Virus record (IMG/VR): IMGVR_UViG_3300028864_000014
Span: 171,319 to 235,318 of that record
DNA: 64,000 nucleotides
Direction: 5' to 3' (one strand)
This document shows positions 20,127-50,626 of this stretch, one piece after another (positions within the stretch are counted from its first letter, which is position 1; the number at the start of each line of letters is the position of its first letter). The notes beneath the pieces are model-generated. The model searched no databases and was not told where the DNA came from. It saw nothing but the letters and a program-made list of their open reading frames with translations. Made by a program: the position numbers and the translations under genes.

Positions 20127-20365
20127 AATCTTTTAAAATTGGAGATAAAGTTATTGTTATTGATGATAGTAATAACAATTTAATTCTGACTAAAAAATAT
20201 ACAATTAGTGGAGTTTTTCATAGAGAATCATTAGATAATATTCCTGAACATAATCATTATTTAACATTCATAGAGTCTGGTGAACAAAAATATTTCAGTT
20301 ATAGATTTGATTTTGATTTAAAAACATCAAGAAAGAAAAAAATTGAAATCTTATGTCAAAAATAA
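20114..20365 (+). CDS. RKxKL-tagged micro-ORF (IGDKV subfamily)
   Basis: KIGDKVIV; RFDFDLKTSRKKKIEIL. Confidence 0.75.
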   Translation: MQKIKSFKIGDKVIVIDDSNNNLILTKKYTISGVFHRESLDNIPEHNHYLTFIESGEQKYFSYRFDFDLKTSRKKKIEILCQK

Positions 20366-20604
20366 AAATTGAATATTTGAAAATTGGTGATGATGTAGTT
20401 GTAATTAATAATAACAATACAATATTAGAATTTGGTAAAAAATATAAAATTAAACAAATTCATTTCAGTGTAAAATTTAATAAATATTACTTATCATTAG
20501 TAGGAAATTCCGATTTGAGATATAAAATTAAACGATTCAAATTAGATATTAAAACTGAAAGAAAACAAAAAATAGATAAACTTAAAGAATATGAAAGTAT
20601 ATAA
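20353..20604 (+). CDS. RKxKL-tagged micro-ORF (IGDKV subfamily)
   Basis: KIGDDVVV; RFKLDIKTERKQKIDKL. Confidence 0.75.
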   Translation: MSKIKIEYLKIGDDVVVINNNNTILEFGKKYKIKQIHFSVKFNKYYLSLVGNSDLRYKIKRFKLDIKTERKQKIDKLKEYESI

Positions 20605-24173: not shown

Positions 24174-26069
<1,896 letters not shown>

Positions 26070-26121
26070 TTATTATTATTTTTATTGTATATATTAAATA
26101 ATAAAATTGAAAAAATGAATA

Positions 26122-26154
26122 AAAAAAGAGAGCAAATTATTTGCTCTCTTTTTT
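26122..26154. terminator. palindrome nearly identical to 24135-24170
   Basis: AAAAAAGAGAGCAAAT-t-ATTTGCTCTCTTTTTT. Confidence 0.85.
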
Positions 26155-26584
26155 ATCTAATTGAATAATCAATTATTTTTAATTCTTTGAATGATTTTAA
26201 TAATAGAATTTTATTCATCTCATGATCATAATAACCAAAATAATTATAATCATTAAATTCCTTCTTATTGATTAATATTTTCTCAATTAATATATTTATC
26301 TTATACTCATTTTCATTATAATTCGATTCTAAAAAATTCCAAATATATTTATGATCACACCAAATGAATTTATTGTCTGTATCTTGAATGAATAAACATT
26401 CTCCATTTATTTTATGATTTAATAAATCATCATTAGAAATATTATTCAATTTTAATAATTTATTTTTCCTTATATAAGATTCATCATAATACCAATAAAT
26501 TTGATGATATAAATTTTCACTAACCACTGGATAACATGACAACAATTTGTCTAATAACCAATTTCTTAAATCATCTGTTGACAT
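26153..26584 (-). CDS. Family X paralog (dispersed copy)
   Basis: NWLLDKLLSCYPV..YWYYDESYIRKNKLLKLNN..CLFIQD..WNFLESNY. Confidence 0.8.
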   Translation of the reverse strand: MSTDDLRNWLLDKLLSCYPVVSENLYHQIYWYYDESYIRKNKLLKLNNISNDDLLNHKINGECLFIQDTDNKFIWCDHKYIWNFLESNYNENEYKINILIEKILINKKEFNDYNYFGYYDHEMNKILLLKSFKELKIIDYSIR

Positions 26585-26585
26585 A

Positions 26586-27197
26586 TCAAATATTATTGTC
26601 AGTTTTAAATTTACTTAAATATTCTACTTGCTTGTAATGAGATGAATTAATCAAATCTTTTATGATATAATATACATCAGTAGTAGAATATTTAAGAATA
26701 TTATTTTCAGATTCGATATCAATATTTTTATTTGAAATTTTTATGTCAATTTCTTTTTTTATTTTTTCTTCTTCTTTCTTCTTATTTTCTTTAATACTTA
26801 AAAAATAAACAGACATAAATAAATGATTTAATTCAACTATACTATTTTTAGTTATAATATTTTTATCACTACTACCAATAATTTTACTTGAATCATCTTT
26901 ACCCCAATAAAACTCTTTACCTCTAATATCTACTATATATTCGACATGATTTCCTATTATATCTAATCTTAGAACCTTTGCTATTATATTGGCTGTGCTT
27001 GGATAATATGAATAAATCCAATCACCTGGTACTACATCAGATTCATCATCTAAAACATACATATTAAAATTATTATTTTTAACATCAAGATATCTCTTTG
27101 ATGCAAAATAATTATTATTTATGTCAGTATGCACATAAGACTTACCAATAGTAGGTAATATAACTATATCAGTATATTCTTCAATTTGTTTCATCAT
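26586..27197 (-). CDS. hypothetical protein
   Basis: 203 aa. Confidence 0.75.
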   Translation of the reverse strand: MMKQIEEYTDIVILPTIGKSYVHTDINNNYFASKRYLDVKNNNFNMYVLDDESDVVPGDWIYSYYPSTANIIAKVLRLDIIGNHVEYIVDIRGKEFYWGKDDSSKIIGSSDKNIITKNSIVELNHLFMSVYFLSIKENKKKEEEKIKKEIDIKISNKNIDIESENNILKYSTTDVYYIIKDLINSSHYKQVEYLSKFKTDNNI

Positions 27198-27547
27198 TTA
27201 ATTTTTTTATTAGAAAACTTAACTTTTATTCTCTGAAGTAAATTTAACTTATTATTATATTCTGATTTATATTTATTCATATCTCCAATATTATATATAT
27301 TAAGAGTGTTTTCTTCACTCATTATGTCCCTGTCAAATTTATAAACTTTCAACTGAATCAATATAAAAGAAAACTGAATAATGATAAATAGCCATGCAAT
27401 TAATCTTATTGTATTATTATTTGTGAATGTTGCAATTATATTTAATATAATTGATATTAAACAACAAACCCAAGTCATTAAAACATAAACTGGTTGCTTC
27501 TTAACAAATACTAAAATTTTCTTCATAACTAATAAAAAATTCTTCAT
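27194..27547 (-). CDS. two-TM membrane protein
   Basis: start moved to ATG 27547; TATATTTG -7 element at 27563-70 (minus). Confidence 0.7.
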   Translation of the reverse strand: MKNFLLVMKKILVFVKKQPVYVLMTWVCCLISIILNIIATFTNNNTIRLIAWLFIIIQFSFILIQLKVYKFDRDIMSEENTLNIYNIGDMNKYKSEYNNKLNLLQRIKVKFSNKKIK

Positions 27548-27607
27548 AATATATATTTTGTGCAAATATACTAATTAAATTTCAAATATGAAAACATATT
27601 TATAAAA

Positions 27608-27635
27608 AAAGAGAGATAAATTATTATCTCTCTTT
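27608..27635. terminator. GAGAG-class terminator
   Basis: AAAGAGAGATAA-atta-TTATCTCTCTTT. Confidence 0.75.
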
Positions 27636-27752
27636 AATTTGTTGTTTCTTATGAACAACTATGCTTTCTTGGCTTTGTCAAAGTTCGTGATGTTTTATAT
27701 CATCACAAATTAACTACATTAATTTATATCTCTATTTTATTTAAAAGTTTAA

Positions 27753-28085
27753 TTAAATGTTGAATTTGTTAGTATCAAATATATTCTTTAATTCTTCTTT
27801 GTTCTTGGACCAATTGATTATTTCAAATCTTGAAAATGGTATTGTATTTGAATATTTATAATCTCTAACATTTTTATATTTTCTTAAAGAATCTGGAACG
27901 TTAATGAAATGTACTTGATAAGGTTCTACTCTATTATCTTCATTATCAATTCCTATTATTTTTCCTATTTGATTACTAAGATATAAATTCAAATCAGGAC
28001 TATATTTGGTATTACAAATTACATAATCACCAACTTCTGGTTCTCCTTCATTAAAAGATTCGTATAGTTTAAATCCTGTTATCAT
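27753..28085 (-). CDS. late SH3/KOW-like protein with KxxE N-terminus and NKFNI C-terminus (copy 3)
   Basis: MITGFKLYESFNEGEPEVGDYVI...DTNKFNI. Confidence 0.8.
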   Translation of the reverse strand: MITGFKLYESFNEGEPEVGDYVICNTKYSPDLNLYLSNQIGKIIGIDNEDNRVEPYQVHFINVPDSLRKYKNVRDYKYSNTIPFSRFEIINWSKNKEELKNIFDTNKFNI

Positions 28086-28408
28086 ATATTAAATTTATTT
28101 GCATTTATTAAATATTCTAAATCTTCTTTTTTTTCAGAATAACCAACCATTTGAGAATGATAAAATGGTTTTATATATCCACTATCAATCTTTGTGAAAA
28201 ACTGAACTAATTCTTCTGGTACATTATCATATCTTATAACTAAGTTTTTTTTATCGTATTCTTCACCATATAAAACTCCTATTGTGCTATCAATAAATCC
28301 TTTCAAATTATATAGTATATCATTTCCACTATTCCAATTATATTCAATTACTATATAATCTCCAACTTTATATTTAGATAACCTTTCAAATTGTTTTATG
28401 TATTTCAT
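28082..28408 (-). CDS. late SH3/KOW-like protein, same family (copy 2)
   Basis: MKYIKQFE..KYKVGDYIV...NANKFNI. Confidence 0.8.
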   Translation of the reverse strand: MKYIKQFERLSKYKVGDYIVIEYNWNSGNDILYNLKGFIDSTIGVLYGEEYDKKNLVIRYDNVPEELVQFFTKIDSGYIKPFYHSQMVGYSEKKEDLEYLINANKFNI

Positions 28409-28692
28409 ATATTAAATTTGTTTGATTGTAGTAAAGGTTCTAATTCTTTTGAATTTTTTGCCCAATATATTATATTTTTTCTATTTACGAACCAAGTACC
28501 TGAAAAATCAATAACATATGAAGTAGAGTTAGCTTCATATAGTATATCAATTAATCTATGAATACCATTATTCACTAAGTCAATTGTTCCTTTTTGATAA
28601 TATGTATCATCTTCGATATCAACAATTACAAAGTCACCTTTCTCTGGCTCTCCTTCATTTATTGATTCATATATTTTAAATTTTGTAATCAT
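28405..28692 (-). CDS. late SH3/KOW-like protein, same family (copy 1)
   Basis: MITKFKIYESINEGEPEKGDFVI...QSNKFNI; TTAATATATA upstream. Confidence 0.8.
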   Translation of the reverse strand: MITKFKIYESINEGEPEKGDFVIVDIEDDTYYQKGTIDLVNNGIHRLIDILYEANSTSYVIDFSGTWFVNRKNIIYWAKNSKELEPLLQSNKFNI

Positions 28693-28726
28693 ATATTATA
28701 TATATTAATTTTTTATATTAAAAATA

Positions 28727-28757
28727 AAAAAGAGTAGATTTTAAATCTACTCTTTTT
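28727..28757 (-). terminator. terminator closing the structural operon
   Basis: AAAAAGAGTAGATTT-t-AAATCTACTCTTTTT. Confidence 0.8.
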
Positions 28758-28760
28758 ATG

Positions 28761-28967
28761 TTAATTGAATTGATATTCTATTACACTCTGTTCTGCATTA
28801 GTTAATCCAATTCCTAATATATTAATTCTTCCTCTATAAAAATTCTTAGGTGGTATAACACCATAATCTAACTTAATACTCATCGTATGTAATTTACCAA
28901 CTACTTTATTTAATGGTTGAATAACACCCATGTCTAACGATATATTCAAATTGTTTATTTTAGTCAT
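28761..28967 (-). CDS. module C peptide (ends VIEYQFN)
   Basis: 68 aa; internal repeat ISLDMGVI/IKLDYGVI. Confidence 0.75.
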   Translation of the reverse strand: MTKINNLNISLDMGVIQPLNKVVGKLHTMSIKLDYGVIPPKNFYRGRINILGIGLTNAEQSVIEYQFN

Positions 28968-28990
28968 TATTTTATTTTATTTTATTTTTA

Positions 28991-30703
28991 TTAAGCGTAA
29001 TCTTCATCAAAATGAGCATTTAGTTCAATTCTAAAAAATTTAATAGCTGGAATTTTATAATAATAATTAACAGAATCAGCAGATAAAATAACAAATTCAT
29101 TGTCTGCAGTTGTAATTGCATAATCACTATAATACGATATTTTATCACTTGTTATTTCACTAAATAACACAGGTAAATCTATTCTATCTCCTATTTTATG
29201 AAATAACATTAACACAATTCCGAAAAAAGGACAGCTAAATTTAGGAAAGCTAACAGAAGGAGTATTAATGTCGTCATAAGGTATAATTTCTTCTGATTCA
29301 AATGGAATGCTCAACACTTTACGTACTATTGTACCAGATCCTTCATTTAACAATGAATAGTTTAGAACATCAGTTCCTGTTTTGAAAAAATAATCTGGTA
29401 AATATTGAGTACCATTATATAATACTGCTGAAAATACGTCCTTAATTGTATTACACACTTTGTATAATGTATCGGCTTCTAAAGTACTTCCAGTTGTTAA
29501 TATAGTAATATCCAATAGATTTTGTTTTTTACCGAAGTAATAACCAAATGCACTACCATCATCTTCCATTGATTGACTACCTTTAAATTTAACACCGTTA
29601 GGTATAGATATTGTGGTATGACTTCTCATTCTATTCCATATTTGATCAGATGCTGTATTAAAATCAAAAGTATTATCAACATTACCTCTGAGTAAAGTAG
29701 CTGCATTAACTACATCATCAGAACCATCAGAATTAACATTAATTTGAACATCTAAATCTGTAGGTAATATAGGATTAGCAGGACCAAAACATCCTACATA
29801 TCCACCTAAGTCAGATGCATATAACGCTTCATTATTCGACTGCGGATTTAAAGAATAATCTAATATACTACCATCAGTATTATACATATTGAAAATGTTG
29901 CCTGATGTTCCGCCATTTCTTGATTCTTTTATAATTCTACAAGTTTCATTTCCAAAAGAATCTATCATAAAAAGAGAATCTAAGTTTTGCTGGCTCATTC
30001 CAGATTCTAAATATAGATTTCTAATTATCTGTATATTTGTTTTTGAATCATTAGTCCATTCAGGCTGTATTAATGGAATATTATTATATTTAAATATACA
30101 AGTTGATGGGAATACAACATATTTATTTGTTCCATTACTTGTATTAATCCAATTATATTCAGATACTTGAATACAATTTTTTATTGTACAACTACCTATT
30201 TCGTTTCCTAAAAAAGTAGATTGTAATATATTCCTGTCTCTTCTACCATCATTAGAAGAACCACGAGCGATATTCTCAACTAATAAATAACTAAAATTAT
30301 TTAATGATGAAACATTATATGATTTTATTATTGAATGAGACCAAGCTCTACTATTAACTGATCCACTCACGGAATCTACTGTCATATTATTGCAAAATGG
30401 TCCTTCATATATAACTGGATTATAATTTAAGAATAATAATTGTTGATTAATATCATCTCCAATTAAATTTTTATTATTTAATTGAAAATATTCATTTATT
30501 ACACCTCTAAAAATTATATATGTTACTCCAATTTTTTGATTAGCCTTAAATATAGATTTATATGGATATTCACGAGTACCATCTCCTGAAAAATCATCTC
30601 CAATATAAGTATGTACAAATACAGTATTTATATTAGTTATTTGTGTGACTGAATCTGTACCATCATCATTTGGAACGAAACGTGTTTTAAATAAATTTGT
30701 CAT
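28991..30703 (-). CDS. module B beta-helix-type virion protein
   Basis: GDDFSGDGTREYPYKSIFKA cap; GGYVGCF, NVNSDGSDD, EIIPYD, RIELN shared with two paralogs. Confidence 0.75.
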   Translation of the reverse strand: MTNLFKTRFVPNDDGTDSVTQITNINTVFVHTYIGDDFSGDGTREYPYKSIFKANQKIGVTYIIFRGVINEYFQLNNKNLIGDDINQQLLFLNYNPVIYEGPFCNNMTVDSVSGSVNSRAWSHSIIKSYNVSSLNNFSYLLVENIARGSSNDGRRDRNILQSTFLGNEIGSCTIKNCIQVSEYNWINTSNGTNKYVVFPSTCIFKYNNIPLIQPEWTNDSKTNIQIIRNLYLESGMSQQNLDSLFMIDSFGNETCRIIKESRNGGTSGNIFNMYNTDGSILDYSLNPQSNNEALYASDLGGYVGCFGPANPILPTDLDVQINVNSDGSDDVVNAATLLRGNVDNTFDFNTASDQIWNRMRSHTTISIPNGVKFKGSQSMEDDGSAFGYYFGKKQNLLDITILTTGSTLEADTLYKVCNTIKDVFSAVLYNGTQYLPDYFFKTGTDVLNYSLLNEGSGTIVRKVLSIPFESEEIIPYDDINTPSVSFPKFSCPFFGIVLMLFHKIGDRIDLPVLFSEITSDKISYYSDYAITTADNEFVILSADSVNYYYKIPAIKFFRIELNAHFDEDYA

Positions 30704-30705
30704 AA

Positions 30706-30972
30706 TTAATTAATTTTTATTTTTATTTGTAAATCTGAGCAAGCCCAACTACTTTGATCACTATAAATATATTGAGGATAAATTGTTATTGTAAATTTAT
30801 CAAATATAACGGTATAAGAAATTGGTCTATTAAATATATCTAAAGAATCTGGAATTAGTTTATCATTAATTAAAATATTAACATTCTTATTATACCATTC
30901 TTTAAATTCTGAACTTTGCATAGATAGTAGTTTGGTTTCATCAAACTCTGTTGTGCCTGTTATTTGTATCAT
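30706..30972 (-). CDS. module A small protein (MIQITxTxEFDE)
   Basis: paralog of 34482-34748. Confidence 0.75.
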   Translation of the reverse strand: MIQITGTTEFDETKLLSMQSSEFKEWYNKNVNILINDKLIPDSLDIFNRPISYTVIFDKFTITIYPQYIYSDQSSWACSDLQIKIKIN

Positions 30973-30989
30973 TTTTTTTTATATTTTTT

Positions 30990-31211
30990 TTAATTAAATT
31001 GATATTCTATTATACTTGGTGGAGCCACATCACAACTAGGTCCAAATGTACTAAGAGTACAAATAATAGGTTTATCTACACTTATACCTAAAAACATCAT
31101 TTCAGGTTTATGTATAATACTAGTTGATAATCCTAAAAAACCCAATTCATGATCATGTGCAGCATTAGTTGATAATCCTAAAAAATTCAATGAAAGGTTA
31201 TTATTCCGCAT
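30990..31211 (-). CDS. module C peptide (ends IIEYQFN)
   Basis: 73 aa; 15-aa repeats FLGLST/FLGLST/FLGISV/FGPSC. Confidence 0.75.
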   Translation of the reverse strand: MRNNNLSLNFLGLSTNAAHDHELGFLGLSTSIIHKPEMMFLGISVDKPIICTLSTFGPSCDVAPPSIIEYQFN

Positions 31212-32712
31212 AATTTAAATTTAATTCTATTTTAATATAAACTATAACTTGGGGTCTTAATGTAACTCCTGTTATAAAATTTAAATCAAATGATTCATTA
31301 TCAGCATTTGTTACTGCCCAATTTCCATATTCAGTTAAATTTATATCTGAAATTACACCTAATTCAGACAATTCATTAAATAGAACAGGAACATTCGCAT
31401 CTATGTGATACCAAATTTGACAGATATCATTAAATGGTGTTGAATATCTTGGATAAGAACTAATTTGTGTTAAAGAATCATAAGGTATAATTTCAACACT
31501 TTCACAAGGAACTGATGATGTTGTAAATGTTCTATTCTTTCCAAAATAAAATCTATCTATTAACCCACTTTTTAGTTGAGCTTGACCACCTCCAGGTTTC
31601 ATACCTCTTGCATATGATAATACGTTACTTCTTGTTCTATTTCTAGTTTGAATAGAATCTTGTGAAGCGTAGAATCCAACTTTTCCGTTGCTAATCAATA
31701 AATCTGGTGTTGTTACTAAATCGTCACTACCATCTGAATTAACATTGTTTATATCACCAAACACTAATGGATTACTACTAAACTCACCAGATATATTAGG
31801 TTTGTAACAACCAACATACTGATGATCAAGTAATGTAGGATTAGCCATATAAAGAGCAATATTATTTCCATTAACATTAAGAGTATAATCAGATATAGAT
31901 CCATCAACATTATACCTATTAAATATTGGATATATAGAATCATCTACAATCTTATTAGTTTGTCCTATAGATATATCTGAATAAAATGATGTGTCTATTA
32001 ATAACCTCATATAAGTTTGAGATGTGCCAGATAATGTATTAGTAGCATAATTAGTTAATGATGATAACAACTCAGGTATTGAATTTATATTATCAGTATC
32101 TGGAATTATTTCTCCATTCCATTTCCAAACAGTTGTTTTTCTAAATAAACAATATTTGAATATTGGATAACAACTTAATGCTACTCTTGGAAATAAATCA
32201 ATCATTGATACATATATATTAGAATCCTGTATCATACCAGTTGAATCTGTCCAATTATCAAAATTTAAAAATGTTGTATTAGAATCACCATTAGAATAAG
32301 ATGCAGCTCGTGATGATGATTCTACAAAATTAAAACTATTTTGTCCATATGAACCTAATCCTTTTCTAGTAACGAAACAATTTTTTACTTCTCCATAATT
32401 GCCTGTAACTTCTAATACTCTAAGATTATATAAATTTGCGGTATAACTTCCATTACATATTCCATTAATATCAGCAGATACATTATCACCTATTATATCA
32501 ACATATGATGATATATTTTCTATTGTAGGACCGCTTAAAACAATTGATGATGCTGTACCCATAGCGGATATAGCCTTGGTTAAAGTGGCATATGGCAACT
32601 CTCTTGTTCCTGGATTAGTGTTTAATCCAACTATTGTACTAACAAATTTAGTGTTTGTATTTGTTAGTACAATGTTACTTTTTGGATGATAGTATATTCT
32701 AAATATTCCCAT
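31201..32712 (-). CDS. module B beta-helix-type virion protein
   Basis: NPGTRELPYATLTKA; EYGNWAVTNAD; IKIELNLNY. Confidence 0.75.
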   Translation of the reverse strand: MGIFRIYYHPKSNIVLTNTNTKFVSTIVGLNTNPGTRELPYATLTKAISAMGTASSIVLSGPTIENISSYVDIIGDNVSADINGICNGSYTANLYNLRVLEVTGNYGEVKNCFVTRKGLGSYGQNSFNFVESSSRAASYSNGDSNTTFLNFDNWTDSTGMIQDSNIYVSMIDLFPRVALSCYPIFKYCLFRKTTVWKWNGEIIPDTDNINSIPELLSSLTNYATNTLSGTSQTYMRLLIDTSFYSDISIGQTNKIVDDSIYPIFNRYNVDGSISDYTLNVNGNNIALYMANPTLLDHQYVGCYKPNISGEFSSNPLVFGDINNVNSDGSDDLVTTPDLLISNGKVGFYASQDSIQTRNRTRSNVLSYARGMKPGGGQAQLKSGLIDRFYFGKNRTFTTSSVPCESVEIIPYDSLTQISSYPRYSTPFNDICQIWYHIDANVPVLFNELSELGVISDINLTEYGNWAVTNADNESFDLNFITGVTLRPQVIVYIKIELNLNYAE

Positions 32713-32735
32713 AAATTATATATTTTTTATTATTT

Positions 32736-32918
32736 TTAATTAAATTGATATTCTATTATACTTGGTAATGCAGGATCTGTACTTATACCAAAAAATGTTA
32801 TATCACCTGGTACTAATGTTTCAACTGTTATGTTGATAAGTGATATTTCTGCAGGCATACCGCTAACAAATTGAGTGCAAGAAATAAAATCTATTGATAT
32901 GTTATTAATACGTTCCAT
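32736..32918 (-). CDS. module C peptide (ends IIEYQFN)
   Basis: 60 aa; FFGIST..PSIIEYQFN. Confidence 0.75.
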   Translation of the reverse strand: MERINNISIDFISCTQFVSGMPAEISLINITVETLVPGDITFFGISTDPALPSIIEYQFN

Positions 32919-34495
32919 TATAAATAATAATTAAGATTTATTTCTACTTTAGCATAATAGATTTTTATGTTATTTAGTTTTATACCAGGTAATGAGCTTA
33001 ATAAAAAACTTTCATAATCAGCATTTGTAACAGCCCAATTTCCGTACTCAGTTAAATTTTTATCAGTCACTATTCCAAATGATAAAAGATCATTAAATAA
33101 AATAGGTAAATTTGTTGTTGAGTTATACCACATTTGACACACACCATTAAACATAACTGAAAATCTCGGAAATGATGAAGGTTCTGTCATACTGTCATAT
33201 GGAATAATCTCTAATGATTCTTGAGGTAAAGATGGAGAATCTGTCACATTATATGCTTGAAATTTACCAAAAGAGAATCTACTTTCTAATCCAGATTTAA
33301 CTTGTCCTTGCATTCCAGCTAAAGAAAAACCACGTTTAAAAGTAAATACATTAGAACGAATTCTATTTCTTATCTGAACTGAATCAGCGGAACTAACAGT
33401 AAAATTACTATTGCCATTAAAAACTAGCATATCAGGAATTGTAACTAAGTCGTCAGAACCATCAGAATTCACATTTAATACATTGTTAAATGTTATCACA
33501 TCAGCATTTGCTTTGTAACATCCAACATAGTTTTTTTGATCGCTCATAGTTAAAGCAATGTTTTCAGAATTCAAAAACAAAGAATAATCAATAGGATTGT
33601 CATTTGTGTATCTATTAAATATTTTTTTGCTTCCTTCAATAGATGGTCTATCCTCAACTACCTTACATGTTTGTCCATTAATATCTATGTAAAATAAAGG
33701 AGACGTAATTTCATTTGGAAACATAGTCTGACAGTATGCTTTTTCCGTTGCATCTACAATGGTATTAGAAAAAATATACCATGCTGAAATTACATCTGTC
33801 ATATAATCATTCAATATATTACCATAAGTACCATAGTTAATAGGAACTATAATACCTTTCCATTTCCAAATTATTGTTTTTCTAAATAAACAATATTTGA
33901 AAATTTGAAAATTTGATATATTTGATACTGATGTATAATTATATAAATCTACTTCAATAACAAATATGAAATTTAATAAATTGACACCTGATATTTTACA
34001 ATAATTTTTAAAATTTAATACTGTATTATTTTTAATATTCAATCCATTACTTATTCCATTATTTGAACCTCCTTCTACTAAGCTATTGTAATTGTTAATA
34101 AAGTTACTCTCAACTATTGATGAACTCATTAACATTGTGTTTATACTTGAATTTATTATACCTCCAAGTCCAGTGAATTGTAATATTTTTATACCATAAA
34201 AAATGCTTGATCCATAATAATTACATGTCCAACTACCATTTAAATATGCATCTTCTCCATCTCCTATTAAATATCCATGAAAAAATGATGCTGGATTTTC
34301 AATAGTTTCTCCTCTATATAATATATTACGAGCATTATCATCATATAATGATGTAAATTTTGTCAATGTCGCAATTGGAAATTCTCTTGTTCCTGGATTA
34401 TTGTTGTTGCCAGTTATTGAACATACAAATGTGGTGTTTGCATCAGTGAGAACAGTATTTGTAACTGGATTATAGTATCTTTTAAATATTCCCAT
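32918..34495 (-). CDS. module B beta-helix-type virion protein
   Basis: NPGTREFPIATLTK; EYGNWAVTNAD; AKVEINLNY. Confidence 0.75.
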   Translation of the reverse strand: MGIFKRYYNPVTNTVLTDANTTFVCSITGNNNNPGTREFPIATLTKFTSLYDDNARNILYRGETIENPASFFHGYLIGDGEDAYLNGSWTCNYYGSSIFYGIKILQFTGLGGIINSSINTMLMSSSIVESNFINNYNSLVEGGSNNGISNGLNIKNNTVLNFKNYCKISGVNLLNFIFVIEVDLYNYTSVSNISNFQIFKYCLFRKTIIWKWKGIIVPINYGTYGNILNDYMTDVISAWYIFSNTIVDATEKAYCQTMFPNEITSPLFYIDINGQTCKVVEDRPSIEGSKKIFNRYTNDNPIDYSLFLNSENIALTMSDQKNYVGCYKANADVITFNNVLNVNSDGSDDLVTIPDMLVFNGNSNFTVSSADSVQIRNRIRSNVFTFKRGFSLAGMQGQVKSGLESRFSFGKFQAYNVTDSPSLPQESLEIIPYDSMTEPSSFPRFSVMFNGVCQMWYNSTTNLPILFNDLLSFGIVTDKNLTEYGNWAVTNADYESFLLSSLPGIKLNNIKIYYAKVEINLNYYL

Positions 34496-34748
34496 AAACT
34501 AGATATTTTTTAAAATTAAAATCTTGATTTCCAACAATTGGATAATATTCAGCCTCTACTGTTATATTACCAAATATCCAAGTCGATGGTCTTCCAAATT
34601 TATCAAATGTTGAACAAGTTTTTGATTCATCATTCTTAAAATTTATTTTACTTAAGCATTCAGTTTGAAACCATATCGTAAATCCAGATGATTGAAATTC
34701 TAAATCTTTAGATTCATCAAACTCTATTGTGTCTGTTATTTGTATCAT
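34482..34748 (-). CDS. module A small protein (MIQITxTxEFDE)
   Basis: paralog of 30706-30972. Confidence 0.75.
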   Translation of the reverse strand: MIQITDTIEFDESKDLEFQSSGFTIWFQTECLSKINFKNDESKTCSTFDKFGRPSTWIFGNITVEAEYYPIVGNQDFNFKKYLVYGNI

Positions 34749-34762
34749 ATTTTATTTGTTTT

Positions 34763-37700
34763 TTAGAAAATTATAATCGCATTAGCATTGTCATATCCAG
34801 TTTGTATTGCAATATCTAAAATAACTAAGTCAGTTAAAGCAGGTAAAGTTACTCCAACTAATGTTATTTCATCGTAAGTAATATCACTAATTGAAACAGT
34901 TACTCCTGAACAGTTAGTTGTTAATAATACTCTTGATATTGTTTTATCTGTTATCCATTGAAATCTTTGAGGACTTGGTGTGCTATTTGCTCCAATTTTA
35001 CTTAAAGATAAACTTTGAGGTATAATTGATGAATCAACAGTAATTCCATTTCCGTCAATACAAAGATGAATTTCACCACCATTAATAGGAGTAGGGTAAG
35101 AACCATCATTTTTCTTACAATAATATAATTTTCCTCCTGATATTTCAACAAACTGTCCTACACAATTATTATAAGTACCTCCATTTATCGTAGTAAATGA
35201 AGAAGATAATCCTTCACAATTAGTAAAAGTACCAGAGCAAATTCCATTAAAACTACCGTTATTCCCTTTACAATTTAAAAATGTACCAGTTAAATTATTT
35301 ACTTGAAAAATTAATACAGAATTTACATCTGTAAATGTTCCAGATAATGTATCAATTGAACTTGAAAATAATGGCAAATTATTAGAACTGAATATGTTTT
35401 TGAAAATACCTGAGCAATTAAAAATACCTGAAAACCCAGATCCCATTGTAATATTTATATTCTTAAATGTTCCAGATGCAGTAACATCACCATTAGTAGT
35501 ATCAGCTTGAATTTGTCCAGAGCAATTTTCAATATATAATTCTGGAAAATTTCCTGTTAGTTTTAAGCCACCGTCAATAAAGTTAATACCATTTATTTTT
35601 ATTTTATTATTAGTAATTATAACACCAGAACCACCAATATTTACATCGATATTTCCAGTAGATGAAACTAAATTTATATTTTGAGTATCTAAATTAAGAC
35701 TATCAGTTAGAAAACTATAATATCCAGGATATATAATAATATTAACTGGACTATCTGGTGCTGGTACTATAGCTTTCGCTATATTATACACATTTTGCAA
35801 TTCATTTCCATTTATTCCAGGATTACTATTTCCACCTTTTACTGTTAAAAATTGAGTTCCTATTGTTGGAGCAAAATCACCTCCCCCAATTATTTTTCCA
35901 TAACCGTCAATACATAATATAATTGTACCTCCACTTGAAGGTATTTCAAATGTACCTGGAGTAGTCAATCTACAATTATATAAACTTCCTGTTAATGCTC
36001 CACCTCGTGTAGAGTCACCAAAAGATTTACTTTTTGCTGTACAATTTATAAATGTTCCAGATGCAATACCATCAATTCCAAATGAAGTATTTCCAGCAGT
36101 ACAATTTATAAATGTTCCAGATACATTTGCTCCAACTTCATTTGTTCCAAATGAGAAATCTCCAGAATTACAATTAATAAATGTACCAGATAAAGATGTT
36201 GAAGAAAATCCAGTTTCAGCAGTACAATTTATAAATCTTCCAGATAAATCTCCATTCTCTCCATTAAACAACGCACCGTCTGATGTTATATTTTCAAAAT
36301 GACCAGGAAAGTCAGAAACACCTGATCCAAATGTGTTATTTGTTAATTTTAAATTTTTAAATGTTCCAGATAAAATAGTACTATTATCAATTGTGCTACC
36401 TTTAATTTGTCCTGAACAATTTTCAATCCTTAATCCAGGAAAATTTCCTCTTATTTCTAATCCCATACCTGTAAAATTTATACCAATTAATTTAATATTA
36501 TCTGTGATAATTAATATACCACTATAACCAATTTCAATATCTAATTCCCCTGTTGAAGAAATTAAATTTATATAAGGAGTATCTAAACTAATTAATGATG
36601 TCATTCCATAATAACCAGGATAAATAATTATATTAATTGGACTAATTATTGTTGGATTTAAAGCCTTAGCTATATTATAAACATTCTGTAACTCAGCTCC
36701 ATTTGTTCCAGGATCACTACTGATTCCTTTAACTGTTAAATATTGATTTCCATCTGATGGAGCAAAATCTCCTGCTCCTATTACTGCTCCATAACCGTCA
36801 ATACATAACAGAATAGTACCTCCACTTGAAGGAAGTCCAAATGTACCTGGCGTAGTCAATCTACAATTATATAAACTACCTGTTAATGTTCCACCTTGTT
36901 TAGAATCACCAAAAGATCCAGTATTACCTTTTGCTGTACAATTCACAAATGTTCCAGATGTCATACAATGAGCACCAAATGAAGAATTTCCAGCATTACA
37001 ATTAATAAATGTACCAGACACTTCTATTCCACTATTACCAAATGAATTATCACCAGAATTGCAATTAATAAAAGTAGTTCCAGATGATATAATACAACCT
37101 CCTCCTCCTCCAAATCCAGCATCATCACATGTACAATTTTCAAATGTCGCACCAGATGATATGACAGCTCCTCCTACACCAAATCCGTTTGCAGCATTAC
37201 AATTTTTGAATATACCAGATATAATTTTAGTATCATAAAATAAATTTCCACCTTTATGATATATATTTTCAAAATATCCAGATGCTTCTTGTATATAACC
37301 AAATCCATTACCATTAACTAAATTTATATCTTTAAAAGTTCCAGATAAATTAGTATCTGGATACGTTAAAATATTACCCCCATCTATCATTCCTGAACAA
37401 TTTTCAATCCATAACCCTGGAAAATTTCCAGTGAGTTTTAATCCACTACCTCCAAAAAATATACCTGTCAATTTAATATTATCTGAAATAACAATAGCGC
37501 CAGCAAATTCAATTTTAACATCTAATTCTCCTGTTGCTGATATTAAATTTATATAAGGAGTATCTAAACTAAGTCCATTAGACATTCCGTAATATCCAGG
37601 ATATATAATTATGTTTATAGGATTATTTGAACTCGGATTTATAGATTTTGCTAAATCATATACAGTTTGTAATTCCTCTCCATTTATTCCAGAATCAACA

Positions 37701-38770
37701 TTTTTTCCTTCAACAGTTAAATATTGAGCACCATCAGATGGAGCATAATTAGTTGGAATTCCAACTACATTAGTTGCTGATATATTTGTTATTTTTGATC
37801 CATCTCCACTCATTGTACCACCACTTACAACTAAATTACAATCTACTATTACATATCCAGTACTATTAATAGGTTTTATTGCTTCATAATCTGCATGTCT
37901 TATTGACTTTAATGCATCGCCAACATTATCTATTGTTATATTTGGATTGACACTTATCATATAAGACGTCATTGTTTCAAAATCAGAATTTAAAGGTACT
38001 CTCCAACCATCTGGATTATTTTGTATTAATGTGTTAGCTGCAAATAAGCAATATATTCTACCGTATATAACATTTATATCATTTTGAGTATATCCACTAG
38101 GCATGGTAAAAGGTAAATTAAATATTGCATAATCTTCTATAATATTTTCAATTGGATATTCAGCATAAGCAGGATATTGAGTACTAGTATTATACCACCA
38201 ATCATGATCATCCAAAGTTACTAATGAAGTTGTTGCAGATGATGCATAATCATATCCATTTATAACTCTTAAATTTTCTCTAGTCCAAATTTGAGTACCA
38301 ATTTTAACACAACTATATACATTTCCGTCTATATCTGTGAATCCAGATGAAATTATTTCTCCATCAGATAATAATGTTTCACCTGAAGTCGCTTCACGAG
38401 TTAGTCTTATTGAAAATCCATTATATCCAGACCATTCATTATATGAAATAGTAGATAATTGATTATCTAAAAGTGCAGCATAAAATTTAGTAGATGTACT
38501 ACCTGGTGTTGAAGTTCCAAAATAAGTTGAAAATCCGTTATTAAAATAAACTCCTTGGTTTCCTCTAATACCTGCTGTTACAGCGTCAAAATTATAATAA
38601 TCTTTTCCATATATATTATAATCCCCACTATACCACCAAAGAGGAAATTCAGTTGTAGTTCCAATAGTTGGTGGTACTTTTTCCCAATAACTTGCAGAAC
38701 TACTTCCAGTTAATCCGCTTTCAAATCCTCTAACCCATTCCTGACTAGCTAAATATATTATTTCACTCAT
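34763..38770 (-). CDS. large mosaic fibre/adhesin: LASxEWV tag, Fib_succ_major (FISUMP)-like region, three repeated beta-helix modules
   Basis: YLASQEWV; FTDIDGNVYSCVKIGTQIWTRENL..YGRIY..GWRVP; AP(S/T)xGxQYLTV..NGxELQxVY..IIIYPGYY x3; FINCxAG repeats. Confidence 0.8.
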   Translation of the reverse strand: MSEIIYLASQEWVRGFESGLTGSSSASYWEKVPPTIGTTTEFPLWWYSGDYNIYGKDYYNFDAVTAGIRGNQGVYFNNGFSTYFGTSTPGSTSTKFYAALLDNQLSTISYNEWSGYNGFSIRLTREATSGETLLSDGEIISSGFTDIDGNVYSCVKIGTQIWTRENLRVINGYDYASSATTSLVTLDDHDWWYNTSTQYPAYAEYPIENIIEDYAIFNLPFTMPSGYTQNDINVIYGRIYCLFAANTLIQNNPDGWRVPLNSDFETMTSYMISVNPNITIDNVGDALKSIRHADYEAIKPINSTGYVIVDCNLVVSGGTMSGDGSKITNISATNVVGIPTNYAPSDGAQYLTVEGKNVDSGINGEELQTVYDLAKSINPSSNNPINIIIYPGYYGMSNGLSLDTPYINLISATGELDVKIEFAGAIVISDNIKLTGIFFGGSGLKLTGNFPGLWIENCSGMIDGGNILTYPDTNLSGTFKDINLVNGNGFGYIQEASGYFENIYHKGGNLFYDTKIISGIFKNCNAANGFGVGGAVISSGATFENCTCDDAGFGGGGGCIISSGTTFINCNSGDNSFGNSGIEVSGTFINCNAGNSSFGAHCMTSGTFVNCTAKGNTGSFGDSKQGGTLTGSLYNCRLTTPGTFGLPSSGGTILLCIDGYGAVIGAGDFAPSDGNQYLTVKGISSDPGTNGAELQNVYNIAKALNPTIISPINIIIYPGYYGMTSLISLDTPYINLISSTGELDIEIGYSGILIITDNIKLIGINFTGMGLEIRGNFPGLRIENCSGQIKGSTIDNSTILSGTFKNLKLTNNTFGSGVSDFPGHFENITSDGALFNGENGDLSGRFINCTAETGFSSTSLSGTFINCNSGDFSFGTNEVGANVSGTFINCTAGNTSFGIDGIASGTFINCTAKSKSFGDSTRGGALTGSLYNCRLTTPGTFEIPSSGGTIILCIDGYGKIIGGGDFAPTIGTQFLTVKGGNSNPGINGNELQNVYNIAKAIVPAPDSPVNIIIYPGYYSFLTDSLNLDTQNINLVSSTGNIDVNIGGSGVIITNNKIKINGINFIDGGLKLTGNFPELYIENCSGQIQADTTNGDVTASGTFKNINITMGSGFSGIFNCSGIFKNIFSSNNLPLFSSSIDTLSGTFTDVNSVLIFQVNNLTGTFLNCKGNNGSFNGICSGTFTNCEGLSSSFTTINGGTYNNCVGQFVEISGGKLYYCKKNDGSYPTPINGGEIHLCIDGNGITVDSSIIPQSLSLSKIGANSTPSPQRFQWITDKTISRVLLTTNCSGVTVSISDITYDEITLVGVTLPALTDLVILDIAIQTGYDNANAIIIF

Positions 38771-38812
38771 AATTAATATTTTTTTTTATTTTCTTTATTT
38801 TTGAATATAAAT

Positions 38813-39172
38813 TTATTCAGTAACATAAGGAAATTCAAGATCTATTTTATTTATTTCAGAAAGCCATAAATCTTTTGATTGATTAGCTTTATCTATATTA
38901 TTAAGAGCCAGATATTTTTGATATGCCATATAATATGAATCACTTCTATCTTTATACGCCATACTTCTTTTAAATTTTATCTCATCATTATTATCAATGT
39001 GAGTTGGCATTCCAACAAAAACATTTAAATCATCTTCATAAACAGTTGTTGTTCCTGTTACATATATAACTTCTTTATATCCGTTTTCAATTGAATATGT
39101 TGTTGAATCTCCTAACAGCCAATTTGGTTGTGTAAAAAATTCTATTTTTCCTTCTATTAATTTTGCTTTCAT
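38813..39172 (-). CDS. tail-fibre assembly/chaperone-like protein
   Basis: RSMAYKDRSDSYY...WLSEINKIDLEFPY; position between fibre genes. Confidence 0.55.
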   Translation of the reverse strand: MKAKLIEGKIEFFTQPNWLLGDSTTYSIENGYKEVIYVTGTTTVYEDDLNVFVGMPTHIDNNDEIKFKRSMAYKDRSDSYYMAYQKYLALNNIDKANQSKDLWLSEINKIDLEFPYVTE

Positions 39173-39192
39173 ATTATCAATTAATTTTTATA

Positions 39193-39936
39193 TTATATTC
39201 CAAATCTGGATCTTATAGCAGTAAAATTATTCATAATTTCACTATCATTTAATGCTCTATTATATCTTCTTTGAGTTGCAATATACCCAGAAAAATGCTC
39301 TTGCATTGAATTGTATGCTCCAACATAATGTCCAGATGTATCTGAAAATGGTGTTGCTGGATTATATGGAACAGAATTTGAATTTACTAATTCACCATTT
39401 ATATAAATTCTGAATCCAGTATCACTTAATACTGCTGCTACATATGTCCAGGTATTTAAATATATATGACCACCAGACATCTCTCCATTATTTGTACAAT
39501 AAATCCATAAACTTCCATTATTCTGTACTCTGAATCTATATTGATATCCAAACCCTTTTGAACATATTTGTCTATTATCATTTAAATTATCACAATAAAT
39601 AACAGAATCTAATGTTATGTTGGTATTTAATGAACTAAAATCTGGTGAGACACCAACACCCATTCCTTGTGTTCCGTCAAACCTCATGCTACCTCCTCCT
39701 ATTGTTTGAAATTCATTTCCAGTATTTAGATACGCATTATTTTCTCTTCCTGTTAAATCATACCAAATATTTCCAGATTTAGGATAAGATGCTAGATTTC
39801 CTGCATCCAAATCTAAAACTGTTATTCCAGTTGTAGTGATACCAGTTATAATATCTGCTGATGCCCATAAATTATCTACACCTTTAAATGGTATAATTTC
39901 TTCTGGGTTAAATAATTCTCCGCTATAATATTTCAT
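39193..39936 (-). CDS. LamG/concanavalin A-like jelly-roll virion protein
   Basis: LDLDAGNLASYPKSGNIWYDLTG, WTYVAAV, RIYINGELV, RYNRAL, RSRFGI. Confidence 0.85.
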   Translation of the reverse strand: MKYYSGELFNPEEIIPFKGVDNLWASADIITGITTTGITVLDLDAGNLASYPKSGNIWYDLTGRENNAYLNTGNEFQTIGGGSMRFDGTQGMGVGVSPDFSSLNTNITLDSVIYCDNLNDNRQICSKGFGYQYRFRVQNNGSLWIYCTNNGEMSGGHIYLNTWTYVAAVLSDTGFRIYINGELVNSNSVPYNPATPFSDTSGHYVGAYNSMQEHFSGYIATQRRYNRALNDSEIMNNFTAIRSRFGI

Positions 39937-39937
39937 A

Positions 39938-40354
39938 TTAAATGTTTTTAATTGCTACTGCATAAATTTCAAAAGCAGTTTCTGTAAATACCTGTTCATA
40001 AACAATTGTCCAAGTAGAATTGATTCCTAAAATAGGAATATTTCCACGCCAAACAACTCCAGTCGGTTGATAAATTGTAGGTACTGAGCTTCCTGTTTTG
40101 AATATTAAAATTGATTCATTAACTAACCCATTTGCTGGAGTAGGAAGAATAACAGTTATTGTGTTTCCACTCGATATTGTTCCAATATATGTTTCAGTCC
40201 AATTATCTAAATTTAAATTTCCAGTAGGAGAATTTATTTTTTTATATTTATATACAGTATTGATTGTGACTCCACTACCAATTGCAACAGTTAATCCACT
40301 GAAAATATCACTAACCCATTCTTCACTTGCTAAATGTATTATATCTGAAGCCAT
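39938..40354 (-). CDS. short fibre-associated protein with LASEEWV tag
   Basis: IHLASEEWV; GVVWRGNIP..WTIVY. Confidence 0.7.
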   Translation of the reverse strand: MASDIIHLASEEWVSDIFSGLTVAIGSGVTINTVYKYKKINSPTGNLNLDNWTETYIGTISSGNTITVILPTPANGLVNESILIFKTGSSVPTIYQPTGVVWRGNIPILGINSTWTIVYEQVFTETAFEIYAVAIKNI

Positions 40355-40357
40355 AGA

Positions 40358-40687
40358 TTAAAATGTTATTTTATTTATAACGCCATTCATCATATAATTT
40401 ATAAATCCAGTTACTGTATCACCTTCGATCGTTACTGCAGATGCGATAAATTTATACACATCAGTTGGATTTACTAATGCTGGTTTTTTCAAATTATATG
40501 CTAATATTGCTTTGCTTACATCAGAAGGATTTGCAGTGTTTCCAGATGCGATTAATGCTAATATATCATTTTTAGCTGCAGTATCTCCAGAATTTGTACT
40601 TGATAATATTTTTTTCTGATCTTCTGTTGGAAATACTCGATCTTTTGGCATCCAAACTCCTTCACTTAGGGATATTAAATTTGTCAT
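40358..40687 (-). CDS. hypothetical late protein
   Basis: 109 aa; TTTATATATA upstream (40718-27). Confidence 0.7.
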   Translation of the reverse strand: MTNLISLSEGVWMPKDRVFPTEDQKKILSSTNSGDTAAKNDILALIASGNTANPSDVSKAILAYNLKKPALVNPTDVYKFIASAVTIEGDTVTGFINYMMNGVINKITF

Positions 40688-40763
40688 TTTTGTTATATTT
40701 TTTTTTGTTTATAATAGTATATATAAAAAACTCAAAGCAAAATAAGTCTATAATGATAAAAAA

Positions 40764-40793
40764 AAACTCAATTAACTATTATTAACTGAGTTT
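40764..40793 (-). terminator. ACTCAGTTAA-class palindrome (copy 1)
   Basis: Single mismatch is G-U only in minus-strand RNA, matching gene direction. Confidence 0.75.
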
Positions 40794-40811
40794 CTTATCT
40801 ATTTTTATATT

Positions 40812-44838: not shown

Positions 44839-45342
<504 letters not shown>

Positions 45343-45492: not shown

Positions 45493-46266
<774 letters not shown>

Positions 46267-46267
<1 letters not shown>

Positions 46268-47065: not shown

Positions 47066-47985
<920 letters not shown>

Positions 47986-47989
47986 TAAT

Positions 47990-50626
<2,637 letters not shown>

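What the first reader, a model, noticed from the sequence alone, without database searches (positions are those of the whole stretch)
30990..31211. C peptides are themselves short repeat arrays with an invariant tail
Seen: the 73-aa C has four 15-aa units (FLGLST, FLGLST, FLGISV, FGPSC; a 20-bp exact DNA repeat at 31121 and 31166, period 45). The 60-aa C has about three similar units. The 68-aa C has a different repeat (ISLDMGVI/IKLDYGVI). All keep the IEYQFN tail. Inference: strand-donating peptides, each unit adding a beta-strand as in donor-strand complementation. Less likely, leader/follower-type precursors for processing.
Basis: partly seen in the sequence, partly recalled or inferred. 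Interest (0 to 1): 0.6.

Follow-up and report, generated by a model that had tools for sequence, protein, structure and literature searches.

The report
Repeat peptides that partner phage tailspikes
Three small genes in a very large peat-bog phage encode 60-73-residue peptides made of three or four short repeats, and these peptides most likely clip onto the tailspike-like protein encoded just upstream; this kind of tail accessory has not been described before.

Summary
The three C peptides (window 32736-32918, 30990-31211, 28761-28967, minus strand) contain significant internal repeats. The period is 15 aa in the 73- and 60-aa peptides and 22 aa in the 68-aa peptide. All three end in IEYQFN, and the 20-bp exact DNA repeat is real. 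In related phages the tail varies but keeps a xYQ(I/F)x shape.

The C genes are real: dN/dS is 0.14-0.37, and about 37 clusters turn up among 1.84 billion representative proteins. No Pfam, PHROG, NCBIfam or PDB relative exists. In 18 of 19 distinct loci a C-module gene lies directly after a B gene. B is a 500-800-aa protein whose N-terminal half is a right-handed beta-helix, the tailspike/lyase fold. In other phages the same module is fused to lectin-type domains (LamG, Fib_succ_major, Lcl_C), still in the position after B.

C alone does not fold (pLDDT 62). A B3+C3 complex prediction supports binding (ipSAE 0.75; best control 0.00). One unit pairs as a beta-strand with a conserved B loop. The other units and the tail were not placed.

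Unit length tracks a 65-aa insert in B, and the units within one peptide evolve in concert.

Best reading: an extended peptide that binds B and serves as a clamp or docking module. Classical donor-strand complementation is not met.

The parts
30990..31211 (-). C2, the 73-aa repeat peptide (the finding). It has a short N-terminal segment, four 15-aa units and the tail IEYQFN. Its start codon lies 11 nt inside the end of B2.
31146..31190 (-). C2 unit 1 (aa 8-22, core FLGLST)
   Evidence: Read from the translation; period 15 confirmed.
31101..31145 (-). C2 unit 2 (aa 23-37, core FLGLST). It shares the 20-bp exact DNA repeat with unit 1.
31056..31100 (-). C2 unit 3 (aa 38-52, core FLGISV). By alignment it corresponds to the C3 unit that was placed on B in the complex model.
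31011..31055 (-). C2 unit 4 (aa 53-67, degenerate, core TFGPSC)
30993..31010 (-). C2 tail IEYQFN, followed by the stop codon at 30990-30992
32736..32918 (-). C1, the 60-aa repeat peptide (three 15-aa units plus the tail). Its start shares one base with the B1 stop codon (TAATG).
28761..28967 (-). C3, the 68-aa repeat peptide (two 22-aa units, one short unit and the tail). This is the type most widespread elsewhere.
31201..32712 (-). B2, 503 aa, partner of C2. It belongs to the beta-helix tailspike-like family and lacks the ~65-aa insert.
32918..34495 (-). B1, 525 aa, partner of C1. It is 48% identical to B2 and also lacks the insert.
28991..30703 (-). B3, 570 aa, partner of C3. In the AF2 model residues ~6-310 form a right-handed parallel beta-helix. 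The predicted C-binding groove involves residues 307-313, 344-348 and 370-390.
34482..34748 (-). A1, an 88-aa protein that opens the cassette. It overlaps the start of B1.
30706..30972 (-). A3, an 88-aa paralogue of A1 that opens the third cassette.
34763..38770 (-). 1335-aa fibre protein (Fib_succ_major domain). Its last ~35 residues recur at the end of the gene that precedes A-B-C in other phages.

Best explanation
The C genes encode small partner subunits of the B proteins. B is a tailspike-like receptor-binding protein, or depolymerase, with a right-handed beta-helix, and it belongs to the host-recognition module of a very large phage that probably infects Bacteroidales.

Each C peptide has a short N-terminal segment, three or four short units that are likely to form beta-strands (15 or 22 aa each), and a conserved C-terminal motif. 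C is translated just after B, in a coupled fashion. It is disordered on its own. It binds B in extended form in a conserved groove where the beta-helix meets the C-terminal domain, and at least one unit adds a beta-strand to a conserved glycine-rich B loop.

The likely role is a clamp or assembly cofactor that stays on B and also serves as a docking module. In related phages the same module, in the same gene position, carries lectin-type domains, so there it would tether extra sugar-binding heads to B.

Shown here: the repeats, the purifying selection, the B-C gene adjacency, the fusions, the match between C type and B type, and the concerted evolution of the units.

Predicted only: the binding and its site.

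Inferred: retention in the virion, and the roles of the remaining units and of the tail.
For: (1) Real genes. dN/dS between C orthologues is 0.14-0.37. A profile of C finds 37 clusters at E<=1e-3 among 1.84e9 representatives.

(2) Tight linkage to B. In 18 of 19 distinct B genes with readable downstream sequence, the next gene carries the C module or a repeat peptide. The gap is 0-25 nt or the genes overlap. These loci include a Paludibacteraceae MAG and a Candidatus Symbiothrix MAG.

(3) Matching types. B proteins without profile positions ~401-465 pair with C peptides of 15-aa units (B1, B2, L008, L026, L027). B proteins with that insert pair with 22-23-aa units (B3, L008-L013, L020, L023, L024, L030, L031).

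(4) C alone is unstructured in AF2: pLDDT 61.8, pTM 0.31.

(5) Complex prediction for B3+C3. The tool's verdict is 'supports binding'.
- Median score is 0.75 and the best of 3 controls is 0.00.
- That mark was reached by 58 of 80 solved complexes and 2 of 110 mismatched pairs. These counts hold only roughly, because my own alignments were used.
- The three runs agree in at least 78% of contacts.
- Partner pLDDT is 51-56.
- The lowest-error pairs are B 371-377 with C 31-35, and B 345-347 and 379-381 with C 24-28.
- C has no sequence relative in the PDB, so the pass is not recall of a solved complex.

(6) Interface residues of B are more conserved than the rest: 0.657 against 0.577, and 85 of 10000 random residue sets reach that value.

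(7) Fusions in the C position:
- LamG + C (P0118, P0125)
- Ig-like + C (P0135)
- Fib_succ_major + two C modules + Lcl_C (P0115)
This fits a structural docking element better than a free chaperone.

(8) B fold. AF2 gives pLDDT 90.8. Residues 6-310 match pectate and alginate lyases and phage tailspike depolymerases at Z 9-11.6.

(9) Context. Collagen-like fibre proteins, LamG, CBM5/12 and Fib_succ_major proteins flank the cassettes.
Against: - The binding evidence is a single prediction for one pair (B3+C3), at 1:1 stoichiometry. The partner pLDDT is low (51-56).
- The most conserved part of C, the tail, was not placed with confidence. Neither were two of the three units.
- The pair named in the finding (B2+C2) was not modelled.
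- No expression or proteomic data exist. All 24 runs that hold the stretch are peat-metagenome runs not on record as RNA.
- The oligomeric state of B is unknown.
- The match between B insert and C unit length may reflect a single evolutionary split, so it does not count as many independent events.
- One B gene (602 aa, L023) has no C gene after it.
Confidence: 0.55

Rival explanations
1. Transient assembly chaperone. C binds nascent B, helps it fold or oligomerise, and is then released. It would not be a virion component, like many tail-fibre assembly proteins encoded downstream of fibre genes.
For: The position directly after the receptor-binding gene, and the predicted binding, are what chaperones such as Tfa, gp38 or the Alteromonas phage 'cap' chaperones show. 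For the last of these, beta-sheet pairing with the fibre was also predicted (PMC10579305). C is disordered on its own.
Against: The same module is fused to LamG, Ig-like, Fib_succ_major and Lcl_C domains in the same gene position. Such binding heads make sense only if the module stays attached. C has no sequence or fold relation to known chaperone families. B models confidently without C, though that is weak evidence.
Confidence: 0.2
2. Self-assembling mini-fibre. Three C chains form a short trimeric beta-structure, such as a triple beta-spiral, which in adenovirus has 15-residue repeats. This sits on B as a distal tip.
For: C shows a 15-aa period and does not fold as a monomer. In the fusions the module would act as a shaft between lectin heads. 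That adenovirus shaft repeats are 15 residues long is my own knowledge.
Against: The hydrophobic pattern of the units (a single strand of the type xFxGxSx) does not obviously fit the two-strand spiral repeat. I judged this by eye only. The 1:1 model already places the middle of C in a groove of B with controls at 0.00. A homotrimer was not modelled.
Confidence: 0.1
3. Precursor peptides for processing (leader/follower, RiPP-like). The conserved ends would act as recognition elements.
For: The peptides are small, with conserved N-terminal and C-terminal ends and a variable repeated middle.
Against: No peptide-modifying enzyme, protease or exporter was found among the neighbours. The partner B is a beta-helix carbohydrate-enzyme-like protein. 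The module occurs as an internal or C-terminal domain of 146-528-aa lectin-bearing proteins. The genes sit in a phage tail module.
Confidence: 0.03
4. Chance ORFs, or spacers that are not translated, between tail genes.
For: The ORFs are short, the genome is very AT-rich (24% GC), and there are no RNA or protein data.
Against: dN/dS is 0.14-0.37. The ORFs are conserved at 24-87% identity across phages of different GC content. Fused forms exist. The starts overlap or closely follow the B stop codons.
Confidence: 0.02

Closest known systems
Tail-fibre accessory or assembly proteins encoded just downstream of the receptor-binding gene (lambda/Mu/P2 Tfa, T-even gp38, Alteromonas phage A5 gp9 / V22 gp27 'chaperone caps'; PMC10579305)
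   Same: The gene lies immediately after the fibre or spike gene and co-varies with it. It is predicted to bind the receptor-binding protein. For A5/V22 the predicted contact is also pairing of beta-strands between the two proteins. gp38-type proteins stay attached and carry binding function, which parallels the lectin fusions seen here.
   Different: C has no sequence relation to them: Pfam, PHROGs, NCBIfam and PDB give no match. It is much smaller (60-73 aa) and has no helical body. It is built from tandem 15/22-aa units that evolve in concert. Its partner is a beta-helix protein, and the predicted site is an interdomain groove, not the distal tip.
Donor-strand complementation in chaperone-usher pili
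   Same: An extended segment, unstructured on its own, is predicted to add a beta-strand to another protein's sheet.
   Different: The acceptor is not an incomplete Ig-like pilin, and B models as complete without C. There is no chaperone or usher. Only one unit is seen to pair. The two are not homologous.
Anchor or adaptor modules that hang several receptor-binding proteins on one another in branched phage tails (e.g. CBA120 and G7C tailspike N-terminal anchor domains; my own knowledge)
   Same: A small conserved docking element is joined to interchangeable sugar-binding heads, as in the LamG-, Fib_succ_major- and Ig-like-C fusions.
   Different: Here the dock is a short repeat peptide that also exists on its own with no head attached. 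It lies at the C-terminus or in the middle of the fused proteins.
Right-handed beta-helix tailspikes and polysaccharide lyases (comparison for partner B)
   Same: B3 residues 6-310 align to PL6 alginate lyase 7dmk (Z 11.6, rmsd 3.8, 214 aligned residues), to pectate lyases (Z ~11) and to phage depolymerases 6c72, 7vz3 and 5w6f (Z 9-10.4).
   Different: No sequence family matches above threshold; there is only a weak hit to the start of DUF1565. The C-terminal half (310-570) found no clear match in the whole-model searches and was not searched on its own. Catalytic residues and trimer formation were not tested.

Membership tests
Chaperone-usher donor-strand complementation | The acceptor subunit has an incomplete Ig-like fold that lacks its last strand. 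| tested here: not met
   B3 models alone at pLDDT 90.8 and pTM 0.89. Its N-terminal half is a right-handed beta-helix.
Chaperone-usher donor-strand complementation | An extended donor segment inserts as a beta-strand into the partner's sheet or groove. | tested here: inconclusive
   This is a prediction only. C3 31-35 pairs with B3 371-377 at expected errors of 1.5-1.9 A. The score is 0.75 against controls of 0.00. The other units were not placed.
Chaperone-usher donor-strand complementation | Periplasmic chaperone and usher genes lie in the locus. | tested here: not met
   Pfam and PHROG scans of the neighbours show none.
Phage tail-fibre assembly proteins (Tfa/Caudo_TAP, gp38, gp57A) | Sequence membership in the family profiles. 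| tested here: not met
   Pfam, PHROGs and NCBIfam give no hit for C1-C3 at E<=0.1. The PDB profile search gives no hit at E<=1.
Phage tail-fibre assembly proteins (Tfa/Caudo_TAP, gp38, gp57A) | The gene lies directly downstream of the receptor-binding gene and is specific to it. | tested here: met
   18 of 19 distinct B genes are followed by a C-module gene, and C type matches B type.
Phage tail-fibre assembly proteins (Tfa/Caudo_TAP, gp38, gp57A) | The protein is required for folding or oligomerisation of the fibre. | not testable with these tools
   This needs co-expression experiments.
Intramolecular chaperone domain of tailspikes (Peptidase_S74) | A helical trimeric domain with an autoproteolytic serine, found by sequence profile. 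| tested here: not met
   B and C have no Pfam hit. The AF2 model of C shows no helices at all.
RiPP-type precursor peptide | An adjacent modifying enzyme, protease or exporter. | tested here: not met
   None was found among the genes from 24174 to 43469.
Triple beta-spiral fibre shaft (adenovirus/reovirus type) | Repeats of ~15 residues that form a homotrimer. | not tested
   The 15-aa period is present in C1 and C2.
Right-handed beta-helix tailspike/depolymerase (for B) | Parallel beta-helix fold. | tested here: met
   VIA-align gives Z 9-11.6 over residues 6-310. Foldseek was weak; its best hit was the phage 7-7-1 tail fibre at E 1.8e-3.
Right-handed beta-helix tailspike/depolymerase (for B) | Homotrimer with catalytic acidic residues in the groove. 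| not tested
   No oligomer model or active-site analysis was done.

The most novel reading that the evidence does not exclude
C is a multivalent 'staple'. Each repeat unit would bind the same conserved groove on a different copy of B, or on successive equivalent sites. Unit number and unit length would then encode the geometry of a B oligomer. The same staple would serve as a portable dock that lets phages hang interchangeable lectin heads on a tailspike.

Two findings fit this reading. Units within one peptide are more alike (49%) than unit 1 and unit 2 taken from different peptides (40%), and 0 of 10000 permutations reach the observed value. The 1:1 complex model placed only one unit.

This would be a new principle of receptor-binding-protein assembly, carried by a protein family with no described relatives.
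Probability: 0.2. Interest if true: 0.7.

Novelty: new variant of a known kind. Interest (0 to 1): 0.5.

Why it matters
Phage host range is set by receptor-binding proteins and their small helpers. These helpers are often missed in annotation and are needed to produce working fibres in engineered phages.

This work defines an unannotated family of 60-80-aa repeat peptides, together with its fused forms. The family is tied to a widespread family of tailspike-like proteins (more than 100 clusters) in environmental phages, some of them very large, that probably infect Bacteroidales.

If the peptide is a docking module, it explains how these phages swap sugar-binding heads. It would also offer a compact tag for attaching domains to a beta-helix spike.

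The family is also a clear case of tandem units evolving in concert within a very short gene.

Tried and rejected
- Tandem Repeats Finder at minimum score 30 did not report the 45-nt array. The repeat is better seen at the protein level.
- blastn and tblastn against 50,697 deposited phage genomes found nothing for the region or for B2.
- Pfam, PHROGs and NCBIfam gave nothing for A, B or C apart from sub-threshold hits.
- The ESM Atlas feature search with C3 gave no usable hit.
- The word-based protein search found only 4 relatives of C3 and one of C2. The exhaustive profile search was needed to find the family. One of its hits, P0146 (1701 aa, a T9SS-tailed protein), is a spurious low-complexity match.
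- No natural B-C fusion exists among 107 B homologues, so a single-chain model could not show the docking.
- Sequencing runs: only peat-metagenome runs not on record as RNA hold the stretch, so expression could not be examined.
- Contigs of four runs laid on 28750-34700 showed no unit-number (45-nt) variants in C2.
- B length against C unit number: no relation. The same 68-aa C goes with B proteins of 561-686 aa.
- A programmed frameshift that would join B to C is rejected. C lies in different frames relative to B in the three cassettes and has its own ATG.
- A lysis-gene reading is rejected. It was suggested because C precedes holin- and lysozyme-type genes in L010, L013 and L027. But C follows B wherever B lies, including here, where no lysis genes follow.
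- Complex prediction was unreachable nine times before the job was accepted.

Full report
WHERE THIS IS

The window is bases 171319-235318 of a 235-kb IMG/VR virus record that CheckV rates 33% complete. GC content is about 24% and there are no tRNA genes. Close relatives of the genes studied here lie on contigs of up to 711 kb. The DNA is found only in peat metagenomes.

The region 24-44 kb on the minus strand is a host-recognition module. It holds:
- collagen-like fibre proteins
- a LamG protein
- an 885-aa protein with a CBM5/12 domain
- a 1335-aa protein with a Fib_succ_major domain

After these come three cassettes: A1-B1-C1, B2-C2 and A3-B3-C3.

THE OBSERVATION

The three C ORFs (60, 73 and 68 aa) are the only ones in the 235 kb that end in IEYQFN.

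Their internal repeats are significant against shuffled versions of the same peptide:
- C2: period 15, score 63 against 18.4 +/- 3.6 (0 of 2000 shuffles reach it)
- C3: period 22, score 59 against 19.1 +/- 3.8 (0 of 2000)
- C1: period 15, 18 of 2000

The 20-bp exact DNA repeat at 31121 and 31166 is real. It lies in a 45-nt direct repeat that is 73% identical.

- The 22-aa and 15-aa units are homologous. A profile built only from 22-aa-type peptides finds C2 at E 1e-9, with one 7-residue loop deleted per unit.
- The tail is a conserved motif, not an invariant one. Relatives end in EYQLI, TYQFT, NYQIM, TYEII or FYQIN.

THE C GENES ARE REAL AND FORM A FAMILY

C orthologues evolve under purifying selection, with dN/dS of 0.14-0.37.

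A profile of ten C peptides, searched against 1.84 billion representative proteins, found 37 clusters at E<=1e-3. Most are free-standing proteins of 58-83 aa.

Several hits carry the module at the C-terminus or in the middle of larger proteins:
- LamG + C (P0118, P0124, P0125)
- Ig-like + C (P0135, P0144)
- Fib_succ_major + two C modules + Lcl_C (P0115)

The module has no relative in Pfam, PHROGs, NCBIfam or the PDB.

All members tested have a period of 15 or of 22-24 aa, with z scores of 5-20. More distant loci were found through B. In them a repeat peptide still sits in the same position although its sequence is no longer recognisable:
- L027: 75 aa, four 15-aa units, tail INYQIN
- L031, in a Candidatus Symbiothrix MAG: 76 aa, three 23-aa units of a different sequence

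LINKAGE TO B

B has more than 100 clusters of relatives, and every one that carries a name is called a hypothetical protein.

In 18 of 19 distinct B genes with readable downstream sequence, the next gene carries the C module or a repeat peptide. The two genes overlap or lie at most about 25 nt apart. The fused forms obey the same rule (L020, L023, L032, L033).

In the window:
- the C1 start shares one base with the B1 stop codon
- the C2 start lies 11 nt inside B2
- the C3 start lies 23 nt after B3
- the reading frame of C relative to B differs between cassettes

C is therefore a separate gene that is probably translated in a coupled way. It is not a frameshift extension of B.

C type tracks B type. 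B proteins that lack profile positions ~401-465 pair with 15-aa units. B proteins that have this insert pair with 22-23-aa units. This may reflect a single ancient split, so it should not be counted as many independent events.

B length as such does not track unit number.

WHAT B IS

AF2 with 75 sequences gives a confident model of B3 (pLDDT 90.8, pTM 0.89).

Residues 6-310 form a right-handed parallel beta-helix. The best match is PL6 alginate lyase 7dmk (Z 11.6, rmsd 3.8, 214 aligned residues). Pectate lyases score Z ~11 and phage tailspike depolymerases Z 9-10.4.

Foldseek alone was weak, and the Atlas search gave DUF1565/Beta_helix clusters.

The C-terminal half was not searched on its own, so I make no claim about its fold.

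HOW C RELATES TO B

On its own, C3 is predicted to be unstructured even with 42 aligned sequences (pLDDT 61.8, pTM 0.31, no secondary structure).

- The tool's verdict is that the model supports binding but does not show it.
- The median score is 0.75 and the best of three controls is 0.00.
- That mark was reached by 58 of 80 solved complexes and 2 of 110 mismatched pairs. These counts hold only roughly, because my own alignments were used.
- The runs agree in at least 78% of contacts.
- Partner pLDDT is 51-56.

The confidently placed part is C3 residues 17-41. This covers the linker after unit 1 plus the strand and loop of unit 2. It lies against B3 residues 307-313, 344-348 and 370-390, with further contacts at 272-302, 437-438, 471, 491-496, 559 and 561. 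That site is a groove between the end of the beta-helix and the C-terminal domain.

The lowest-error pairs run in antiparallel register (B 372 with C 34, B 374 with C 32). This is beta-strand addition to a glycine-rich loop. That loop is among the best conserved parts of B, and it sits directly before the type-specific insert.

Interface residues are more conserved than the rest of B: 0.657 against 0.577, and 85 of 10000 random residue sets reach that value.

The first unit, the last unit and the conserved tail were not placed. By alignment, the placed unit corresponds to unit 3 of C2.

CONCERTED EVOLUTION

Among sixteen 68-aa members, unit 1 and unit 2 of the same peptide are 49% identical. 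Unit 1 of one peptide and unit 2 of another are 40% identical. None of 10000 permutations of the pairing reaches the observed value. If the units had diverged once before the family radiated, the two figures should be equal.

The 20-bp exact repeat in C2 is a local trace of the same process. Two explanations are possible. DNA-level homogenisation may act on the array. Or the units may face equivalent surfaces, for example identical grooves on copies of B, or each other in a stack.

INTERPRETATION

The best-supported reading is that C is a partner of B that binds in extended form. It would act as a clamp or assembly cofactor and as a docking module, which other phages use to attach lectin heads to B.

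It is not shown for every unit, and classical donor-strand complementation fails its defining tests: B does not have an incomplete Ig fold, and there is no chaperone or usher.

Other readings:
- A purely transient chaperone remains possible, but it fits the lectin fusions poorly.
- A homotrimeric mini-fibre was not tested.
- A precursor for processing has no support, because no modifying enzymes lie nearby.
- A chance ORF is excluded by the conservation.

HOST AND DISTRIBUTION

B-C cassettes occur on contigs binned with a Paludibacteraceae genome and a Candidatus Symbiothrix genome (Bacteroidales). One also lies on a 2.7-kb contig binned with a Methanomicrobiales MAG, which is probably a binning error. 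A Bacteroidales host is therefore likely but not shown.

LIMITS

- There is only one complex prediction, at 1:1, and not for the pair named in the finding.
- There are no RNA or protein data.
- The oligomeric state of B is unknown.
- The role of the tail is unexplained.

Noticed in passing
window 45493-51091 (+), also 5942-6439, 26153-26584, 44839-45291, 61491-62683: A family of 18 paralogous ORFs of about 115-220 aa. Thirteen of them form a head-to-tail array with overlapping stop and start codons. Their function is unknown.
   Followed up: no
window 19172-20604 (+), 9304-10004 (+), 7213-7458 (+): A second paralogue family of ten ORFs of ~80 aa, arranged in two tandem blocks.
   Followed up: no
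window 27753-28692 (-): Three tandem paralogues (95-110 aa) lie directly after C3, and all end in NKFNI. The same trio follows the cassette in L009, L012 and L016.
   Followed up: partly
window 34763-34870 (-), the C-terminal ~35 aa of the 1335-aa protein; also L008, L009, L010, L013, L027, L030, L031: The gene before each A-B-C cassette varies from 153 to 1335 aa but always ends in a conserved segment of the type ...GYDNANAIIIF. This may be the point where the A-B-C complex attaches.
   Followed up: partly
window 34763-38770 (-): The 1335-aa protein contains three long internal repeats of roughly 300 aa. Each starts near a ...APSDG.QYLTV.G... motif. They follow an N-terminal Fib_succ_major domain.
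   Followed up: no
window 34700 joined to 30937 (contigs of runs X11 and X15): Contigs in two peat runs join position 34700 (inside A1) to 30937 (inside A3), with 12 other letters between. This suggests strains in which the cassettes are ordered differently through recombination at the A genes. In L008 the cassette order is indeed the reverse of that in the window. The contigs were laid at 80% likeness, so the joints may come from a related phage.
   Followed up: partly
window 32712-32736 (-): B2 has no A gene of its own. It starts 23 nt after C1, whereas its orthologue in L008 is preceded by an 89-aa A gene.
   Followed up: no
window 24174-26066, 40812-43469, 51125-52870, 55407-57197, 57297-58874, 59548-61074 (-): Six large paralogous fibre-type proteins, several with collagen-like Gly-X-Y runs. 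That is an unusually large set of receptor-binding candidates for one phage.
   Followed up: no
L031 4667-4894 (+), Candidatus Symbiothrix MAG contig: A 76-aa peptide lies after a B homologue. It has three 23-aa repeats of unrelated sequence (core ...SV.VSY.P.P...RLKL.L) and no YQ tail. The architecture is kept although the sequence is not.
   Followed up: partly
contigs carrying P0003, P0010 and P0026: Near relatives of the cassette lie on contigs of 711 kb and 590 kb. This fits the CheckV estimate that the 235-kb record is about a third of a genome. It would place this phage among the largest known.
   Followed up: no
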